A stretch of 64,000 nt of DNA from Trichosphaerium sp. ATCC 40318 (lineage: Eukaryota; Protista; Tubulinea): the NCBI GenBank assembly GCA_038496445.1, contig JALMLS010000179.1, forward strand, positions 62,001 to 126,000, in the 5' to 3' direction. Below the pieces are notes generated by a model. That model saw only the letters and a program-made list of their open reading frames with translations. It did not search any database and had not been told where the DNA came from. The first letter of the stretch is position 1. Every line of letters starts with the position of its first letter. The translations under genes and the position numbers were made by a program. Shown piece after piece: positions 30,477-39,614 of the stretch.

Positions 30477-33400
30477 ATGAGACGCTTGCTTTCAGTAGTA
30501 ACATTCCCATGCAATATTTTTTTTTCGCTTGTTTTTCATTTTGTCGCTTCATCACACGTGCTTTACTCAATTTTTTCGTTATAAGGTTACGGTGTATGGA
30601 ATACAAAGCACTCTTTCTTGAATAATACATCAGTTACGCTTACAGAGGACACAACAAGTAAAAGGCACGAGATTTCAAATCTCGGACTCTAAAAAGCCTA
30701 AAAACGCGTTCAAAACTGACTCTTTGTTATTAGGGCTTCATCAGACTTAGCCCCAATTTTTTTTGATATTGTACCACAGTTCGGAAGTAATGCATTGGCC
30801 GTACGTCGCCGTAGACTGAGGAAATAACACTTATAGAAAACGGTGTTTATGTGTACAGAAAATCACCTTATTTTGTTTCTTCTAGAACCAAGCTTTCTTG
30901 GATTGTGTGGACCTTGCTATAACTACATGGGTGAGTATGTGGCATGCTATTTATTACATGTATGGTCTGCAAAGGAGGCGTTAATCTGTTATTTAGAAAG
31001 GCTTCTTAGCTGCTCAAGAAAAAACTATAATCAACATTGAATTTGACCTTGCCCCTCTTCCTAATGGTGTCATGGGTGACGTTGATGTCAAACGTGTATT
31101 CAGCATGAATATAGACGCTGTAAAGTGCGTTCACGTGACTCAATATAAGGTTTAAAGTTAATATTACATTAGAGATGAAATAGAAACACGTAACTTAGTT
31201 TTTGGAGGTTTCCCTTCTTCCCTTACTTTCAAGCACCCTGAGAATGAAGATGGTGAAGTACTAACTAGAATAGCACCAACTAAAGCTAATTTCAAGGTAC
31301 TTTAATTGCGCCCACTATGTGTTGTTTGTTGTTAAAGAAACTTTTTTTTAATAAGGGCTTGTTTCCTCCTGGACAAGAGATGTTGGATAATATGTATGGT
31401 GAATTGGATGGCAGTATTGTAATGTCGTCCAATGCAGACTTTGACTTTAATATAAAAGATGGACTTTCTGCAGTGCGTGTCATGTTAGAAAGCTTTATTT
31501 TTTGATTTTTGGGGTGTTTTTTTTCAATCTATATTGATATCTTATTACTAGCAGGGAAAAATAGATGCTACTGCTGAGATTGTACATCAGATTGGTGTTA
31601 TTCTTGGGTTCGCTTCAGAAGTTGACAGACGTGAGTTTCCATTATTTTTTACGTTCAACTTTACGACTGTTTTTTTTTTCGGTGTTTTCTAAGTTGTGTC
31701 TTTAATCACGTGCTTACTCATATACAGTTGATAAAATACGAAGAGGTGAACCAGTAGAAGGTGGATCAGGAGTATACCCTGCAATAATTGATATGTTCCG
31801 CTTGGAACAAGAAAGTTTTTTTCGTGCAAGGCAATTGATTCCAGGTACGATTTTTCTTTTACCAAAAACCCCAACAACTTTATCGACTTCGTCTTCGATT
31901 AATGGCTTCTTAGGGGCATCTGCTGTATTTTTTACAATCATACCATCTCAAAAAGATTTTGGGTATCCTGCATTCGGAGAGAGTGGAGACACTGGGCTTG
32001 TTGCAAGCTCGTGGAAAGATCCTAAGACAGGTTCGTTTTTCTTTGTTGCAAAATGAAATTTGACGTGTACAAAAAAGGAATGATGTCTCTCACTGGACAA
32101 AAGATACAGTTCACTGATAATGACATGAACGCATTCAGATCTTTAGGGTGGCTTGTCAGCCGTACGTTATAGCTATTAATTAATCAAAGAAAGGAGTTAG
32201 GCCTAACTGAGTTTGTTTGTAGCATCACAATTTTGTCCCGTGATCCTCCTTGTCGAACAGGAATTTGCAAAACCGGGAGATACCATAGTCATTAGAGTAC
32301 ACTTTGCTAAAGATGCACCATATTGTTTATTTGGTGGTTTTGGAACAGGTTATACATCTCCAGGGACCCTTCAAGCAGATGATACTGTACTGGTACGAAA
32401 AACGTGCTTGTCATTAAACATGTTGTTAATGCTGTTCATCCTACAGGTTTGTGATGTTCCGGATATACCTAGCAGAGATTTGCCAATGAAATTCATTACT
32501 GTTGCAGCTCAAGGAAGTCAAAGCAACTCGTTTCCTATTCTTATTGATCAAGAAGGAAGTACAACAGAACCTCCAACTAGAACGCCGACTACATCACCAA
32601 CAAGAGCGCCAACTAATTCTCCAACAAGGTCTCCAACAAGAGCTCCCACTAGGGAACCAACAAGAGCCCCTACTACGGCTCCAACAAGATCCCCAACGAG
32701 AGCGCCAACAAGAACTCCTACCAGATCTCCAACAAGAGCTCCCACTAGGGAACCAACGAGAGCCCCTACCACGGCACCAACGAGAGCCCCTACCAGATCT
32801 CCAACAAGAGCTCCCACTAGGGAACCGACAAGAGCCCCTACTACGGCGCCAACAAGATCGCCGACAAGAGCTCCTACAAGGCCACCAACAACAGCGCCAA
32901 CTAATTCTCCAACAAGGTCTCCAACTATAGCACCGACCACATCTCCAACAAGAGCTCCAACTGATTCTCCAACAACATCCCCAACAAGAGCACCAACAAC
33001 AGCGCCAACAAGCGGTGCTACTAGGCCACCAACAAGAGCTCCAACTAATTCGCCGACAAGATCGCCAACTAGAGTACCAACTACATCTCCAACAACATCC
33101 CCAACAACAGCACCAACAAGAGCGCCAACAAGCGGTGCTACTAGGCCACCAACAAGAGCGCCAACTAATTCTCCAACAAGGTCTCCAACAAGCGCACCAA
33201 CCCGAGAGCCAACTGTCTCTCCCACACCTGCACCAACGACAATAGTGCCACCAACCCCACCACCAGCTATTCCACCGACTGTTGCCCCTACCAACCCACC
33301 AACTCTCCCACCAACCACAGAAGCGCCTGCTTTGATTATAGATGAAACACCGCTAGCACCTTTCCAAGACGCCAACTTACAATTGGTACGAAAAAAAAAA

Positions 33401-34749
33401 ACCAACAGTTCGTCTTTTTTGTCATTTTGTCTGTTAAAAAATTACTGTGGTAACGAAGCCTTTGTATAACCTCCAGTAAAACAAAGCTTTTACTAGTAAA
33501 AGTACGATCCTTCAGTTAAATGTACTACATTTAGCGGCTGACAGTTACAAACTTTTCCTGTTTTTTTCTTACTTTTTACTAACCTTTTTATCTTTAGATA
33601 ACAAACGATATCTATGAAGTATACCGTGGAACTTTTATTCTTCATGTACCACATTCTAATGGCTTGATAACAAATGATGAATACTTTACAAAACAACATA
33701 ACCTCGGAATGACAATGGTTGAAAAACAACCAGATCATGCAAGACGCTTCCTTCTTTATACAACTGGAGGGTTCAGTTATAGAGGAAACTATCCAATGGG
33801 AATACAAGAAGATGATGCTTTCTCTTATGTAACATATGATATGTCGGGTAAGCTCGTGGGTGCAGCTACAGTGCAGATTCGCGTTGCTGAAGGTACATGC
33901 AGGTTTTTTCTCCTAAAATTATTTTGATTGTTCTGTGCTTTGAGATTTGCGTTCTTAAACAATTTCCGGAAAAATTGAACCTAAATTTGCTATCAAAAAT
34001 CATTCTACTACGCGTAAGGGAACCTTCGGTTGTTGCCATGTTTTGAATATTACTATCAACTAACACATTGCGCAGTCGCTACTTGTTGCGATTTATGGCA
34101 GAAATGCGAAGAAAAACAGTCCAGCCAATGGCTAAATGAATTACCTCATTGTCCTTGTACAGTAAAAGAGTTGAAAGACGATGAATGGAGTATAGATAAG
34201 TGCAATCAAAACCCAAGATGCCGAGAAATAAATCATCCAGGATCGACTTCATGTTATAAATCTGCAATACCAATGCCATTAGATGAACAGCAAGACTGTT
34301 GCTATGATGCGTACGTCATAACTTACTATACATAGCTGCTTCGATAATTAATGGATATCTAGGCAAGGTGAGTTGATAACTCACGGTCCAGGCGCAGGAA
34401 CCCCCAATAAACGAAGATCACCACCAGAACATAATGAAGTTGATTTGTATCCATTCCAGCTATGTGGTGGTAGAACTGCATGGTTTGACTTTCAAAAGTT
34501 TAGGACTCCTAACAACGGGAATATGTAAGCCTTTTTTTATTTGAAAAAAGTTCCCACGTGATAAGACCTTGTATCTTATTCTTTTGTAGGTGTCCTTTCA
34601 ATACAGTTTTTCCTCTTATTCCAAGCAGACCTAGTCTGCAGCTTTGTTACTGCCAACTCGACGTTTGGGAAAACCAACCTCTTCCATGCTCTTACACAAG
34701 CGCTGTGGAAGCTAGATGCTCAAGAAAGAGTTACCACAAGCTGTACTAA
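30477..34749 (+). CDS. Surface/secreted modular protein: degenerate zinc-metalloprotease domain, IPT, PT-repeat stalk, Ig/cadherin-like domain, AMOP domain
   Basis: TKANFK, FDF, IVHQIGVILGF, DMFR, ASSWKD, AFRSLGW; PT repeats; GLITND...GGFSY...DAFSY...ATVQI; AMOP motifs LPHCPC, HPGS..CY, QDCCYD..G.LI..G.GAGTP. Start is uncertain. Confidence 0.75.
32568..33330 (+). repeat. Coding 12-bp tandem repeat (xPTx tetrapeptide, mucin-like stalk)
   Basis: ccaacaagagct/ccaacaaggtct-type units with higher-order blocks. The antisense ORF is an artefact of the repeat. Confidence 0.9.
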
Positions 34750-35008: not shown

Positions 35009-37040
35009 ATGCAAGCATTTAACATCCCAGGTACTTTGTAATCTGTCGTCCTAAAGCTTAAATACGAACTAGTGATCGCACAGGGGCTCAATAGAGATGA
35101 AGCTCTCCAAAGCGCTTTTGAAGCACTCGAGCAAGTATCGCTAGTAGTAGACACCGTATTTTCAGCAATTTCAAGCAGAGTACGACAGTTTCGCGTTATG
35201 ACGCTAACAAACAATAGATTGCGGTCGAAAAATCACGTCTAGTAGGAATATCTGAGCGTATTGACGCATCAAGAGTACGACCAAACGATTTAAATGTCAC
35301 TCACTGTTTTTTTTTCAGTTAAAAGTAAAAGAAGTGTCTTCCAATCCAAAGGCGACCACTGTTTACTCTCCTATGAAGTTACCTGCTAGTTTAAAGCTTC
35401 CTAATAGCACTCCTTTATATTGGCCAGTGAAATCAGGTACTCAAAGACCGCCAAACAAACTGAAGCTGACGTCTTTTTTACCAGCAACCTCCAACAAGGT
35501 TTTCCGTAACCCGTTGAATACCCCAAAGCCAAGTAGTTACACGTACAGCAAAACTCAAGTACGCTATTTATTTGATACATTTCAAAAATAAATACACGTG
35601 ATTAATCATGTGATAGAAACGAAGAGCAGAGCAATCTAATGCGATGTTGGAGAAGTTTGATATCCATTTTCCTGTATTCAACTGTGAACCTAATTTGCTC
35701 GTTGAGAAGAGTAAGTTGCCTCCTGCTTGAGAATCCCATACAACTAAACATTGCATCAAGGTGGCTTAGGTGAAGTATCATCTGTGTCGAACGTGTCTAA
35801 CTTGATTCTATTCAACTCCAAGCAACGTCCTTTCAAGGCAAGGAACAGGAACAAACTTATTCTAGTATACTAACTCTACCATACAGGCTTACAAGGTTGA
35901 AGACAACCTTGATCGTAGTCGCTTCTCATCAGAAGCGCCAGTTAAAATAGCCAAAGAAGAAATTGAACCAGCACCAAGCACTCTAAGAGGTGGCGAAACT
36001 TATACTCGAAAGGCAAACCAGTCGGTTAAATATCGTGGCCGCACTTCACGTGCACCAAGTGCGTACCCTTGTTTCTTTTCACGTGTACCACGCGTATTCT
36101 AATTCATTGATAGCGTTGAACGTTCATGAAAGCCTATCCTCGTTTATGGAAGATGTACCAGTCGCCCAGGACATCAACTATGATAGCTCAATTTCTCAGG
36201 AATCTTTTGCGCCTACAGACGCTTATTCAACACTTACGAAAGTTGATGACTTGCCTTGTGTTGAAGATGATACTACGAAAACAACTACGAAGACAGAACT
36301 TCCAAAAGCTGACAAAGTGCCCGAGAAACAAGAGCAACCGCAAAACGAAGAGAACCAAGAAAAAGATGAAGATGTCATAACGAAGGAAGAGTCAAAGTCT
36401 AGTAGCTTTCGAGATGCCTTGACTAAGGGTAAAAAAGCACTGTCTACAGCTTTAGAAGAAGAGCATGTACACTTTGTAATGATGAGAGGATGTCGAGAAA
36501 TTCCTCTACCTTCCATTGAAGAGGAAGAAACGGATTATGAATCAAACCAAGTTGATGATCCTGTTGTGATTGATAGACAGGATCATCGGTTAATGAGTCA
36601 AGGAAGTTTTATAGATGCTTTAAACAATGGAAAGAAAGCTTTGTCTTCTGCTCCAAAGGAGAGAAAACAAACACCGATGAAGCCCAAGCCAATGTACGTA
36701 CTTTTTTTTTTGGCGCGTCATTTGTTAAATTTCTTTACTAGGTCGCTTCTGGATGAACTAGAGAACTTTAACAAGAATAAATTACGTCCTACTCCAGCGA
36801 ATGAAGAAAGTACAGGTGTTCAGAACACTAATACTTTATCAATATTGCAAGGAGGCATCATTCAAATAAGATCAGACTTGGGTTATGATGCACGTGATTT
36901 TTTTTTTTGTTTTTATTTTTTGATGTGTTGTAATAACACGTGACGCTTACTTCTGTTTATAGGATTCACAGGACGCTGAAAGTGTATGGAGTGATAATGA
37001 TGATTATGACATACCTGATTATCAGATGGAAACGATGTAA
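35009..37040 (+). CDS. WASH1: WASH1-like actin nucleation-promoting factor (WAHD + WH2-like motifs + acidic Trp tail)
   Basis: WAHD: IPVIAQGLNRDEAL...VFSAISSRI...KATTVYSP...GLG...VSNLILFN. C-terminal SLLDELENFNKNKLRPT and DSQDAESVWSD. Confidence 0.8.
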
Positions 37041-37218
37041 CTCCGTCTTATATTGCTATTATCGGGTGGAATAAGTATCAATCTCTTTTCACACTCCTGA
37101 TGATTTAACTCCACAATGTAACTATCCATTTATTCTATAAATAAAGAACGTTATTCGTGCTTACACACGTTTGTTGTTCAGAGTACAAACTTGTTTTATA
37201 CAAACCACATGTAACAGC

Positions 37219-37342
37219 AAAAAAGATCTAGGTCCCTTGCGAGACAATTACGGCGTCTTAGACCACTCGACCACAGGCAAGGCCCGCCAGGATTCGAACC
37301 TGGGATTCCGGCTTCAAATGCTTATAATTAACTACTAGATCT
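37219..37342 (-). ncRNA. Circularly permuted tRNA-Gln(UUG)-like Pol III RNA (tRNA mimic or permuted tRNA)
   Basis: The T-arm CCAGG-TTCGAAT-CCTGG precedes the D-arm TGGTCGAGTGGTCTAAGAC. Acceptor is a hairpin CGGGC-CTT-GCCTG. Terminal stem AGATCTAG/CTAGATCT; T6 terminator; TATA-like TTTAAATT about 23-30 nt upstream. Confidence 0.8.
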
Positions 37343-37691
37343 GTAAACAATAAGTGAGATGGCTAATTTAAACACGACATTTTGCCAGAAAAATAATTGT
37401 GGTTTTTGCTTTTTTTTTATGGCTAGTTTTACAGGTTTGTTTCAGTGCCGCGAACAACTTGTTTATTGGCTAAAGTTTGGTTTGCTGTAAATATCTTTAT
37501 GGTCAAAAAGTAAATTTCATTGAAACATTGAACAAGTGTTTTTTACTGCGTATGAGCGCGTATGAGTTCATCTCAAATTAAGTGGTTCTACTACATTTTG
37601 CGGTTATCAAGATATTAATTTACACCTGCAATAAGTCTATTAACATTTGCTAAAGTGATAAAAATAATAAAAAAAGTTTCAAATGTGTAAA

Positions 37692-37925
37692 CTACAATTG
37701 ATTGTAAATCAGGCCATATAAACAATGACTATGCTCTCCTTCTACCTCACCCTTTTGTAATTACATTCCGTATGTACTTGGCCATATAAATACGCTTTAT
37801 ACTCTCCATCTAGTTCGCCATTGATGTAGTTGCAGTGCTTAAATAGTTCACCAAAAATGAAAACTGCTTGCTTTCTCCAATTGTCTATTGTTGATATAGT
37901 TGCCTATCTCCACTCTCATTATTTC
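37692..37925 (-). pseudogene. MORN-variant/YwqK-like repeat remnant
   Basis: GELFKHCNYINGELDGEYKAYLYGQVHTECNYKRGEVEGEH, with a frameshifted upstream copy IGNYINN. Confidence 0.55.
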
Positions 37926-38062: not shown

Positions 38063-39614
38063 ATGGCGGAAACATTAGATAATGACAAAGTCCAACGCTT
38101 GTTCTTACATTCAATACTCTTAAGCGATACGAAGAGCAGCACAACGACCAACGCTGATATCAGTTTGCTTGCCATTGACTTTTTAAGCGATATAATAGCT
38201 ACAAAGAGGGATTTGTACTTAATGGAGATAAAACCGGACAGAACAAACGCTGATGACGATATTTTAACTACCAAACTGTTTTTTGAATCATGGTTCTCTT
38301 CAAATGCACCCAGAACGTTTCTCTCTCTTGGTATTTATAGATACTTCGTTAAAGAAGCTATTCAAGTCAGCGTCAACATGTTTAAAAAGGTGTATTGCGC
38401 TCTGGAAAAAAATAAAGAAATTGAGAACTTTTTGGCCTCATGCACATTTTCCAAGGTACCCAAAGCGCCTATATCAACAAAAGTAGATGTAGCAATGTTA
38501 TTGCCACTTGAAAACGAGAATTGGATAACTGTAGGACGGTGTGGTCATTGGAAAGACGCTCGAATCGAAAAAGTATTTAACCAACGTTATGGAAAATCTT
38601 GGAGAAGTGGATACGAATGGGGTCCTTTCTTGATCACGTATCGAGATGGCATACAACTATATGAAGAATCTTACTTCCAAGCCATGACACCAAACGTTCG
38701 TTTTTATCACGTGTTATCCCACTAACAGTCTATTTTTAGAGCGAACTTTTGAAATGGATTGTAAACACGGCGAGTGAATGCTATGATACTGATCCAACAA
38801 ACGTCAAGTCTTTCTGTAATTATACTATTCAAGAAGTACCAGGTGCAGCACAACATTGGCAAGATGTCTCAATCCGTCGTTGTTTAATACGAAGAGGCAC
38901 ATGGTTCAAGGGAGATCATCTTGTTGAGGTAAGAGGAAGGGAATCCGAAGGATATAGGTAAGAAAATTATTTTGAGTTTGCTGCTCACCGGTACCTCCTA
39001 GATTGAACCCTGCTCAAATACCGTTTCACAAACCTGAATTAATAGCCAGACCCAGACAGTTTGGTTGGTGGGCCCAAGATACAGCTGAAGACTTTTCAAT
39101 GTCAAACTTTGTTGTTCAAGTTAAATATGACACTGCTGAGATGTTTTTAACCGAGTCATTTGCTAAACTTGAAGAGAAGGATGACTCAGTACTTGAAGTT
39201 GTATTAGAGCTTTTCTTATACGCTAAGGATCCTTTCATACTTCCTTGGATGAAACGCATGAACAACTTGAATCAAACAACGTTGAAATCACCTCGAATTT
39301 CATTACTTCTTGGTAGAGCTTTGAAGCTTGTTCGCGCCACAGATATAAGCGTTCTTAGCGAGTCAACAGATTTTAAAGAACACTTTCATCTTGGATATCA
39401 TGCAGACGTTGAGAAGAAAATAGACTTGATTGATAGAATGTTGTATTATGATGCTCAAGTCAGAAAAGAAGCATTAAAGTCACTTTCGCAAAATATGGCT
39501 TGTACCTGGACAAGAGAAGAACAAATACTAATATTGGAGTGCTTTGCATTAGATCCAGCACGCAAAACTCGTAATCTAGCTAAGGCACATCTAAAACGAA
39601 TAAAGGCACAATAA
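38063..39614 (+). CDS. Hypothetical protein (3 exons, helical C-terminus)
   Basis: ORFs of 220, 70 and 203 aa linked by short introns. Confidence 0.55.

What the first reader, a model, noticed from the sequence alone, without database searches (positions are those of the whole stretch)
37219..37342. Circularly permuted tRNA-Gln-like RNA with a closed acceptor stem: a eukaryotic YrlA-like tRNA mimic or a new permuted-tRNA system
Seen (minus strand, 124 nt): AGAUCUAG UAGUU AAUUA UAA GC AUUUGAA GCCGG AAUC CCAGG UUCGAAU CCUGG CGGGC CUU GCCUG UG GUCG AGUGGUCUA AGAC G CCG UAAUU GUCUC GCAA GGGAC CUAGAUCU UUUUU. The tRNA 3' half (positions 30-73, 37321-37279, anticodon UUG at 37317-37315) lies upstream of the 5' half (positions 3-29, 37278-37251). 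Joining 29 to 30 rebuilds a perfect 5-bp anticodon stem (CCGGC/GCCGG) with a 7-nt loop; D and T loops are canonical. The acceptor is only 5 bp and is closed by a CUU loop, so positions 1-2 are absent and there is no spacer. The ends pair (8 bp + 5 bp) with a side GCAA hairpin, and the unit has a T6 terminator and an upstream TATA-like element. Established: permuted tRNA genes occur in Cyanidioschyzon, prasinophytes, chlorarachniophyte nucleomorphs and Thermofilum, but have a full acceptor, a spacer and a BHB junction; I found no BHB here. Bacterial YrlA Y RNAs share this T-arm / closed acceptor / D-arm order with paired ends. Inference: either a non-chargeable tRNA mimic, or a tRNA matured by ligation at 29/30, cleavage after U73, and Thg1-like 3'-5' polymerase restoration of nucleotides 1-2 (such 5' repair is known in amoebozoan mitochondria).
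Basis: partly seen in the sequence, partly recalled or inferred. Interest (0 to 1): 0.92.

Follow-up and report, generated by a model that had tools for sequence, protein, structure and literature searches.

The report
Back-to-front glutamine tRNA look-alike gene
A small self-contained gene in this protist spells a glutamine transfer RNA back half first, with its amino-acid-accepting end shortened and sealed by a loop, so it is more likely a tRNA-shaped look-alike than a working tRNA, though no RNA data could settle this.

Summary
On the minus strand, 37342-37219, positions 30-73 of a tRNA-Gln(UUG) lie upstream of positions 3-29. The acceptor is a 5-bp hairpin closed by CUU, so nucleotides 1-2 are not encoded. 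The RNA ends pair (8 bp plus 5 bp) beside a GCAA hairpin. A TATA-like box sits at -30 and a T6 run at the end. Swapping the halves gives an ARAGORN tRNA-Gln(ttg). The same swap at 127,858 other places in the window gave calls only here.

It meets neither known family in full. There is no BHB at 29/30, no full acceptor and no spacer, so it is not a classical permuted tRNA gene. YrlA scores 17.3 bits against a threshold of 69, and no Ro-binding motif is present.

The two RNA-derived contig sets that laid on the stretch cover only the neighbouring exon, so expression is untested. No homologue turned up in metagenome, viral or prokaryote scans.

The scan has already noted many permuted tRNA-like genes elsewhere in this genome, including a 29/30 unit with a closed acceptor. 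This is one more family member.

My odds: a stable, non-chargeable tRNA mimic 0.4; a dead copy 0.25; a tRNA rebuilt by ligation and 5' repair 0.2.

The parts
37364..37372 (-). TATA-like box TTTAAATTA, about 30 nt upstream of the first paired base
   Evidence: [quoted passage not shown]
37219..37342 (-).
37335..37342 (-). 5' arm of the 8-bp terminal helix (AGAUCUAG)
   Evidence: inverted repeat I20; pair check; present in the MFE fold
37325..37329 (-). Leader arm (AAUUA) of the 5-bp helix that abuts the junction, followed by unpaired UAA (37324-37322)
   Evidence: pair check; not part of the MFE
37308..37321 (-). tRNA positions 30-43: G30 C31, anticodon loop AUUUGAA (UUG at 37317-37315) and the 3' strand of the anticodon stem GCCGG
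37287..37307 (-). 4-nt variable loop AAUC plus T arm (CCAGG UUCGAAU CCUGG). Contains a perfect B box GGTTCGAATCC
   Evidence: (the only exact match in the window)
37274..37286 (-). Acceptor hairpin CGGGC-CUU-GCCUG. It pairs 66-70 with 7-3, and the loop equals positions 71-73. Nucleotides 1-2 are not encoded
37254..37273 (-). U8 G9, the D arm (GUCG AGUGGUCUA AGAC) and G26. The A-box-like sequence lies downstream of the B box
37251..37253 (-). tRNA positions 27-29 (CCG), pairing with 41-43. This is the last tRNA part before the trailer
37246..37250 (-). Trailer arm (UAAUU) of the 5-bp helix, directly continuous with positions 27-29
37232..37245 (-). Side hairpin GUCUC-GCAA-GGGAC (GNRA-type loop), abutting the terminal helix with no linker
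   Evidence: present in every fold
37224..37231 (-). 3' arm of the 8-bp terminal helix (CUAGAUCU)
37219..37224 (-). T6 run, a Pol III-type terminator. Its first T is the last base of the terminal helix

Best explanation
This is a self-contained Pol III-type small-RNA gene and one member of a family of circularly permuted tRNA-derived genes in this protist genome. Transcription would start about 30 nt after the TATA-like box and end in the T6 run, giving an RNA of about 120 nt (inferred, not shown). That RNA can fold into a tRNA-Gln(UUG) body. The T arm is followed at once by a 5-bp acceptor hairpin sealed by CUU, and then by the D arm. The two strands of the anticodon stem come from opposite ends of the RNA. 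The top three pairs (27-29/41-43) run straight on into a 5-bp leader-trailer helix. The last two pairs carry the anticodon loop as a small side branch. A GCAA hairpin and an 8-bp terminal helix with a U tail clamp the ends. I judge the uncut RNA itself to be the most likely end product. It would be a non-chargeable, tRNA-shaped RNA built on the same plan as bacterial YrlA, acting by occupying or recruiting proteins that recognise the tRNA elbow, the anticodon loop or a U tail (inferred; partners unknown). It is probably not a precursor of a working tRNA. The sequence layout is shown; expression, folding in the cell and partners are not.
For: The layout was verified. It is unique to this locus among 127,858 swap controls. 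A TATA-like box at -30 and a T6 run bracket exactly the paired ends. Leader-trailer complementarity exceeds all but 62 of 5000 shuffles. Nothing needed to make a chargeable tRNA is encoded. The acceptor is 5 bp with a 3-nt loop and nucleotides 1-2 are absent. No BHB lies at 29/30. No known ribozyme or other RNA family was found within 600 nt at E up to 10. The only Rfam model that aligns over the unit is YrlA, through T arm, closed hairpin and D arm. Among bacterial YrlA RNAs, only the one with a 7-bp acceptor stem is cut by RNase P and receives CCA; the shorter ones are not (PMC4201824). With the T and D arms enforced, ViennaRNA returns the tRNA-like fold with the terminal helix, GCAA hairpin and acceptor hairpin at -31.6 kcal/mol, against an MFE of -35.6. 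Earlier notes of this scan, which I did not test, report other units in this genome with loop-closed acceptors, and some as plentiful genome-colinear RNAs.
Against: No RNA contig covers the unit in the two RNA-derived contig sets that cover the exon about 120 nt away. Contigs lose short RNAs, so this is weak evidence. Every conserved tRNA nucleotide is intact: U8, A14, G15:C48, G18 G19, A21, G26/A44, U33, purine 37, U54 U55 C56, A58 and G53:C61. The anticodon stem is perfect only across the junction. This fits a tRNA precursor or a very young copy at least as well as a mimic. The loop CUU reads exactly as C71 U72 U73, with the U73 discriminator that I recall for eukaryotic tRNA-Gln (from memory, not tested). 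The family covers many isoacceptors, which is what a set of real tRNA genes would look like. No Ro-binding motif is present and no partner is known. There is no homologue and so no covariation. The whole-unit fold energy is not unusual (z = -1.1).
Confidence: 0.4

Rival explanations
1. It is the gene of a working tRNA-Gln(UUG). An unknown endonuclease removes the leader and trailer at the base of the leader-trailer helix, and a ligase joins G29 to G30 to give a 71-nt circle. The acceptor loop is opened between U73 and G3, and CCA is added. A cytosolic Thg1-like 3'-5' polymerase then adds G2 and A1, templated by C71 and U72.
For: The re-joined sequence is a flawless tRNA-Gln apart from positions 1-2. 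The 3-nt loop is exactly 71-73. The gene plan of 3' half first, TATA-like box, T stretch and B box before A box matches proven permuted tRNA genes (PMC3978253). In the amoebozoan Dictyostelium, DdiTLP4 is cytosolic and repairs 5'-truncated tRNA in vitro, and DdiTLP3 performs 5' editing in mitochondria (PMC5041481). An untested note of this scan reports an ordinary-order tRNA-Gln(TTG) in this genome with mismatches at exactly 1:72 and 2:71. Many isoacceptors are permuted in this genome.
Against: No BHB lies at 29/30. The two cut sites face each other across a helix junction instead of being staggered by 4 bp, so an undescribed cutting rule is needed. A 5-bp stem with a 3-nt loop lacks the 7-bp acceptor that RNase P measures (PMC4201824). 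The shortest spacers reported are 1-7 nt, always on a full acceptor. I know of no report of 5' editing of nuclear tRNAs. Three unproven steps must all be true. Ordinary tRNA-Gln genes exist in the genome according to untested notes, so this copy is not obviously needed. A32 is unusual for a decoding tRNA.
Confidence: 0.2
2. It is a recently disabled copy of a once complete permuted tRNA-Gln gene. One small deletion removed the acceptor-loop spacer together with nucleotides 1-2, leaving a shorter hairpin. The copy may still be transcribed but has no function.
For: A single deletion covering the loop and two bases of one strand of a 7-bp hairpin gives exactly a 5-bp stem whose loop is 71-73. Other family members are described as complete tRNAs with longer closing loops, for example the 29/30 Cys unit with a 5-base loop (untested note). 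Ordinary tRNA-Gln genes are noted elsewhere in the genome. No RNA contig lies on the unit. It is single-copy with no homologue found.
Against: Promoter-like box, terminator, both end helices, the GCAA hairpin and every conserved tRNA position are intact, so any decay must be very recent. Loop-closed acceptors recur in other units of the family, which suggests design rather than accident.
Confidence: 0.25
3. It is a chance resemblance, a misassembly, or a fusion of parts of two unrelated tRNA genes.
For: There is only one copy and no homologue. Native-order detectors find nothing.
Against: The two halves match each other at both the acceptor (5/5 pairs) and the anticodon stem (5/5 pairs). The swap control gives calls only here among 127,858 offsets. 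Promoter-like and terminator-like signals and an 8-bp inverted repeat frame the unit exactly. The same design is noted many times elsewhere in the genome.
Confidence: 0.02

Closest known systems
Circularly permuted tRNA genes of Cyanidioschyzon merolae, Ostreococcus/Micromonas, the Bigelowiella natans nucleomorph and Thermofilum pendens (Soma 2007; review PMC3978253)
   Same: The 3' half lies upstream of the 5' half in one unit. The B box comes before the A box. There is an upstream TATA-like box and a downstream T stretch. Leader and trailer pair with each other. The exons carry all consensus tRNA nucleotides, and CCA is not encoded.
   Different: Known junctions are 15/16, 20/21, 37/38, 50/51 and 59/60; here it is 29/30, inside the anticodon stem. 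Known genes have a full 7-bp acceptor plus a spacer of 1-74 nt; here the stem is 5 bp, the loop is 71-73 and positions 1-2 are missing. Known genes form a BHB at the leader-trailer junction; none forms here. The known hosts are algae and one archaeon (still so in a 2026 review, PMC13578239); this host is called amoeba-like in earlier notes, which I did not test.
Bacterial and phage YrlA Y RNAs (Rfam RF02553; PMC4201824)
   Same: The order is T arm, loop-closed acceptor-like hairpin (6 bp with a 3-nt loop in the Rfam consensus), then D arm. The anticodon-stem position runs on into a helix formed by the RNA's two ends. YrlA members with a short acceptor-like stem are not cut by RNase P.
   Different: The score is 17.3 bits against a gathering score of 69. 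There is no GNCGAAN0-1G / Ro-binding module. No Ro60 gene was detected in the four large neighbouring ORFs tested against Pfam. This unit keeps a complete anticodon loop as a side branch. It has a eukaryotic Pol III-type setting.
Metazoan Y RNAs
   Same: A Pol III transcript of about 100 nt with a TATA box near -30, 5' and 3' ends paired into a terminal stem, and a 3' U tail.
   Different: No Y_RNA match at E up to 10. Y RNAs have no tRNA-like domain of this kind. Ro60 binding was not tested.
tRNA 5' editing and repair by Thg1-like 3'-5' polymerases in amoebozoan mitochondria (PMC5041481)
   Same: It concerns the first positions of the acceptor 5' strand, rebuilt using the 3' strand as template. 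This would supply exactly the two nucleotides missing here.
   Different: The known cases are mitochondrial tRNAs that encode mismatched nucleotides. Here the gene is nuclear-type and the nucleotides are absent altogether. No enzyme or product was examined.

Membership tests
Circularly permuted tRNA genes (Soma type) | 3' half upstream of 5' half in one unit; the re-joined halves give a cloverleaf with consensus nucleotides | tested here: met
   ARAGORN calls tRNA-Gln(ttg) after the swap, and the swap control is unique to this locus.
Circularly permuted tRNA genes (Soma type) | Complete 7-bp acceptor stem with an intervening sequence between positions 73 and 1 | tested here: not met
   The stem is 5 bp, the loop CUU equals 71-73, and positions 1-2 are absent. 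Known spacers are 1-74 nt on a full stem.
Circularly permuted tRNA genes (Soma type) | BHB motif formed by the sequences next to the junction | tested here: not met
   The BHB scan gave 2 of 4 central-helix pairs at the 29/30 sites. The other candidates lie at sites that would not yield a tRNA.
Circularly permuted tRNA genes (Soma type) | Upstream TATA-like sequence and downstream T stretch, with no signals between the halves | tested here: met
   TTTAAATTA at 37372-37364 and T6 at 37224-37219. There is no T run of 4 or more inside the unit.
Circularly permuted tRNA genes (Soma type) | Circular intermediate and a mature CCA-tailed tRNA | not testable with these tools
   Only assembled contigs were available and none lies on the unit.
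YrlA (RF02553) | Score at or above the Rfam gathering threshold | tested here: not met
   17.3 bits against 69, E = 0.85.
YrlA (RF02553) | tRNA-like module in the order T arm, closed acceptor-like hairpin, D arm, on a stem formed by the two ends | tested here: met
   Alignment to the model consensus and pair check.
YrlA (RF02553) | Ro60/Rsr-binding module (conserved 5' strand, GNCGAAN0-1G motif) and a neighbouring Ro60 gene | tested here: not met
   The leader has no such motif. The four large neighbouring ORFs tested show no TROVE domain in Pfam. The rest of the genome could not be searched.
Metazoan Y RNA (Rfam Y_RNA) | Match to the family model | tested here: not met
   No hit at E up to 10 in 37000-37600.
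Ordinary tRNA gene | Detected in native order by ARAGORN or the Rfam tRNA model | tested here: not met

The most novel reading that the evidence does not exclude
A nuclear tRNA-Gln(UUG) made from a gene that is circularly permuted within the anticodon stem and lacks its first two nucleotides. Its maturation would need BHB-independent cutting and ligation at 29/30, opening of a 3-nt acceptor loop after U73, CCA addition, and templated 3'-5' synthesis of G2 and A1 by a cytosolic Thg1-like polymerase. This would be the first nuclear tRNA shown to depend on reverse polymerisation for its acceptor stem.
Probability: 0.17. Interest if true: 0.92.

Novelty: new variant of a known kind. Interest (0 to 1): 0.62.

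Why it matters
In the papers I could search, including a 2026 review, permuted tRNA genes in eukaryotes are reported only from a few algae and always with a BHB processing signal.

A family of such units in an amoeba-like protist has breaks inside the anticodon stem, no BHB, and in this copy a sealed and shortened acceptor. That leaves two options. One is a eukaryotic class of tRNA-shaped RNAs built like bacterial YrlA. The other is an undescribed tRNA maturation route: a new cutting rule plus 5' rebuilding.

This copy is the sharpest test case in the family. Its genome sequence cannot give a chargeable tRNA without adding two non-encoded nucleotides, so a single tRNA-sequencing experiment separates the models.

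Tried and rejected
- Native-order detection by ARAGORN and by Rfam at gathering scores found nothing.
- Whole-unit thermodynamic stability is not significant (z = -1.1) and cannot be used as evidence.
- The BHB scan found none at the junction.
- ARAGORN also read the swapped locus as Tyr(gta) or Thr(tgt). These readings have mismatched anticodon stems, so I rejected them as by-products of the strong T, D and acceptor scaffold.
- RNA evidence: two contig sets cover only the neighbouring exon and two gave nothing, so there were no joints or ends to read.
- Homologue searches:
  - The metagenome pattern scan gave one chance match inside coding-like sequence (L001).
  - The viral scan gave none.
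  - The prokaryote scan gave one unrelated Polaribacter locus (L002).
- Synteny route: the 220-aa downstream ORF has no relatives in the protein collection, and the neighbours have no Pfam domains, so orthologous loci could not be fetched.
- Mobile-element idea: the unit is single-copy in the window. An imperfect flanking direct repeat is only weakly above chance (p about 0.02-0.03).
- Findings look-ups for Thg1, Ro60 and by sequence were blank.
- One literature search combining "permuted tRNA" with protist supergroup names returned nothing relevant.
- I did not identify the organism myself.

Full report
**Observation**

In tRNA numbering, positions 30-73 occupy 37321-37279, with anticodon UUG at 37317-37315. 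Positions 3-29 follow directly at 37278-37251.

A script that stops on any non-pair confirmed every proposed helix:
- the 8-bp terminal helix (37342-37335 with 37231-37224), which repeat finder also reports as I20;
- the 5-bp AAUUA/UAAUU helix next to the junction;
- the GUCUC-GCAA-GGGAC hairpin;
- the 5-bp acceptor hairpin CGGGC-CUU-GCCUG;
- the 5-bp T stem and the 3-bp D stem;
- the anticodon stem, split into 27-29/41-43 and 30-31/39-40.

The sequence itself shows the conserved tRNA nucleotides: U8, A14, G15 with C48, G18 G19, A21, G26 with A44, U33, A37, G53:C61, U54 U55 C56 and A58. The variable loop has 4 nt. Only A32 is unusual.

Swapping the halves gives an ARAGORN tRNA-Gln(ttg) with a perfect anticodon stem. 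A 7-bp acceptor appears only when A and G are supplied at positions 1-2.

**More than chance**

ARAGORN and Rfam at gathering scores see nothing in the native order anywhere in the 64-kb window. I applied the same 43+28 swap at all 127,858 offsets on both strands. ARAGORN made eleven calls, all at this locus. Six are the Gln reading at neighbouring offsets. Five are Tyr/Thr readings with mismatched anticodon stems, produced by the same T, D and acceptor scaffold.

The perfect B box GGTTCGAATCC occurs once in the window. The leader-trailer duplex energy (-10.2 kcal/mol) is reached by 62 of 5000 shuffles.

The whole-unit MFE is ordinary (z = -1.1). The MFE pairs the anticodon loop with the T loop, as energy models often do for tRNAs. 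With only the T and D arms enforced, the predicted fold contains the terminal helix, the GCAA hairpin, the acceptor hairpin and both pieces of the anticodon stem at -31.6 kcal/mol, against -35.6 for the MFE.

**Gene setting**

A TATA-like TTTAAATTA lies at 37372-37364, 30 nt before the first paired base. A T6 run (37224-37219) begins with the last base of the terminal helix. No T run of four or more lies inside the unit. The B box precedes the A-box-like sequence.

The unit is single-copy in the window. It sits between two plus-strand genes. The upstream one has a 73-nt GC-AG intron (36890-36962), spliced in contigs of two runs, and a last exon laid to 37101. That gene is convergent with the unit. 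The large flanking ORFs have no Pfam domain, so no Ro60 gene was detected next door.

**Comparison with permuted tRNA genes**

The review of the field (PMC3978253) lists 34 genes, in C. merolae, four prasinophytes, the B. natans nucleomorph and T. pendens. A 2026 review still confines eukaryotic cases to such algae (PMC13578239).

Shared features are the half order, the inverted A and B boxes, the TATA-like box with a T stretch, the paired leader and trailer, and consensus exons.

Three defining features fail here:
- The junction is 29/30; the known ones are 15/16, 20/21, 37/38, 50/51 and 59/60.
- There is no full acceptor with a spacer. Known spacers are 1-74 nt; here the loop is 71-73 itself and 1-2 are missing.
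- There is no BHB. At the required sites the central helix would pair ACGC with UUAU, which gives 2 of 4 pairs.

The geometry also differs. G29 runs without a break into the trailer arm of the 5-bp helix. The leader arm is separated from G30 by an unpaired UAA. The two would-be cut sites therefore face each other at a three-way junction instead of being staggered by 4 bp. No known ribozyme or other RNA family scores within 600 nt at E up to 10.

**Comparison with YrlA and Y RNAs**

The only Rfam model aligning over the unit is YrlA. It aligns end to end, matching T arm, closed hairpin and D arm. The score is 17.3 bits against a gathering score of 69 (E = 0.85), so this is a shared plan and not membership. 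The Ro-binding 5' strand and its GNCGAAN0-1G motif (PMC4201824) are absent.

That paper also reports a useful fact. Only the M. smegmatis YrlA, which has a 7-bp acceptor stem, is cut by RNase P and receives CCA; the YrlAs with shorter stems are not. By analogy, a 5-bp stem sealed by three nucleotides is a poor substrate for end processing (inference).

The Pol III-type promoter, paired ends and U tail recall metazoan Y RNAs, but no Y_RNA match appears.

**Expression and relatives**

The look-up of sequencing runs returned four contig-only runs. Laid on 36900-37700, two of them cover only the neighbouring exon and none touches the unit. Contigs lose short RNAs, so expression remains untested.

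Pattern scans kept the T loop and D arm fixed and let the acceptor hairpin vary:
- one chance match in a metagenome contig, with no T stem and coding-like sequence (L001);
- nothing in viral contigs;
- one unrelated Polaribacter locus (L002).

The downstream ORF has no relatives in the protein collection, so orthologous loci could not be fetched. No covariation test was possible.

**Family context (earlier notes of this scan, not tested by me)**

Forty notes in this genome mention permuted tRNAs. They include:
- Lys and Glu units broken at 41/42;
- Arg units with a TATA box, terminal helix and terminator;
- a transcribed Thr unit;
- a heavily transcribed Leu(UAG) unit;
- a plentiful nested double look-alike;
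- a Tyr-like unit with a loop-closed acceptor;
- a Cys unit broken at 29/30, closed by a 5-base loop.

Ordinary tRNA-Gln genes are also noted, as is a tRNA-Gln(TTG) with mismatches at 1:72 and 2:71. The present unit is therefore one more member of a family and not a lone accident. The 29/30 and 41/42 breaks lie one base pair apart in the middle of the anticodon stem. That points to a common design in which the top of that stem continues into the terminal helix.

**Weighing the models**

*Mimic (0.4).* It needs no unproven step. It explains the short sealed acceptor, the absent positions 1-2, the GNRA-type side hairpin and the tight end clamp. The anticodon-stem pairs can all still form in the uncut RNA, so their upkeep does not require ligation.

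*Working tRNA (0.2).* It explains the flawless tRNA body and the fact that the loop reads as C71 U72 U73. Amoebozoa have a cytosolic Thg1-like polymerase that repairs 5'-truncated tRNA in vitro (PMC5041481). But this model needs a new cutting rule, opening of a 3-nt loop, and nuclear 5' rebuilding, all unshown.

*Dead copy (0.25).* One deletion of the spacer plus positions 1-2 from a complete permuted gene would give exactly this hairpin. The intact signals would then mean the event is recent.

*Chance or misassembly (about 0.02).* See the controls above.

**Unexplained**

The GCAA hairpin stacks without a linker on the 8-bp terminal helix. This gives a 13-bp continuous helix with a U tail, reminiscent of an acceptor/T-arm minihelix. 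I could not test whether that matters. A weak imperfect direct repeat (37165-37196 and 37431-37464) brackets the unit plus its TATA-like box.

**Verdict**

The unit is a real, framed, permuted tRNA-Gln-derived gene and a new variant of permuted tRNA genes with a YrlA-like plan. Its product is undecided, and this copy is the best one in the family on which to decide it.

Noticed in passing
L002:1140-1330 (minus strand; NZ_CBFHJT010000065.1, Polaribacter MAG): Downstream of a normal tRNA-Tyr(GTA) lies a run of tRNA-like modules. There is a lone T arm, then a tRNA-like element without an anticodon arm (Rfam tRNA 25.2 bits), then a tRNA-Leu(UAG)-like body without an acceptor stem (30.3 bits, model positions 8-63). 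The last two are joined by a hairpin TCACA-TTAATT-TGTGA, giving the same order of T arm, closed hairpin and D arm. There is a weak YrlA hit (19.4 bits). It is a possible bacterial tRNA-mimic RNA, not homologous to the window unit.
   Followed up: partly
window 36890-36962: A 73-nt intron with GC-AG ends in the plus-strand gene upstream of the unit, spliced out in contigs of two runs (X1, X2). The CDS stops near 37036-37038, and AATAAA lies at 37139-37146. The gene converges on the unit, leaving roughly 60-120 nt between them.
   Followed up: partly
window 37165-37196 and 37431-37464: An imperfect direct repeat of 32-34 nt brackets the unit together with its TATA-like box (a segment of about 234 bp). 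It is only weakly above chance: 45 of 2000 shuffles and 102 of 3000 window samples score as high. It could be a trace of insertion or duplication, or nothing.
   Followed up: partly
window 32213-33469 (+): A 418-aa ORF in a GC-richer, strongly skewed stretch carries a Pfam PT disordered repeat (E = 4.6e-20).
   Followed up: no
window 38063-38725 and 39003-39614 (+): Two ORFs of about 200 aa downstream of the unit have no Pfam domain. The first has no relative in the 5.8-billion-protein collection. They look like lineage-specific genes.
   Followed up: partly
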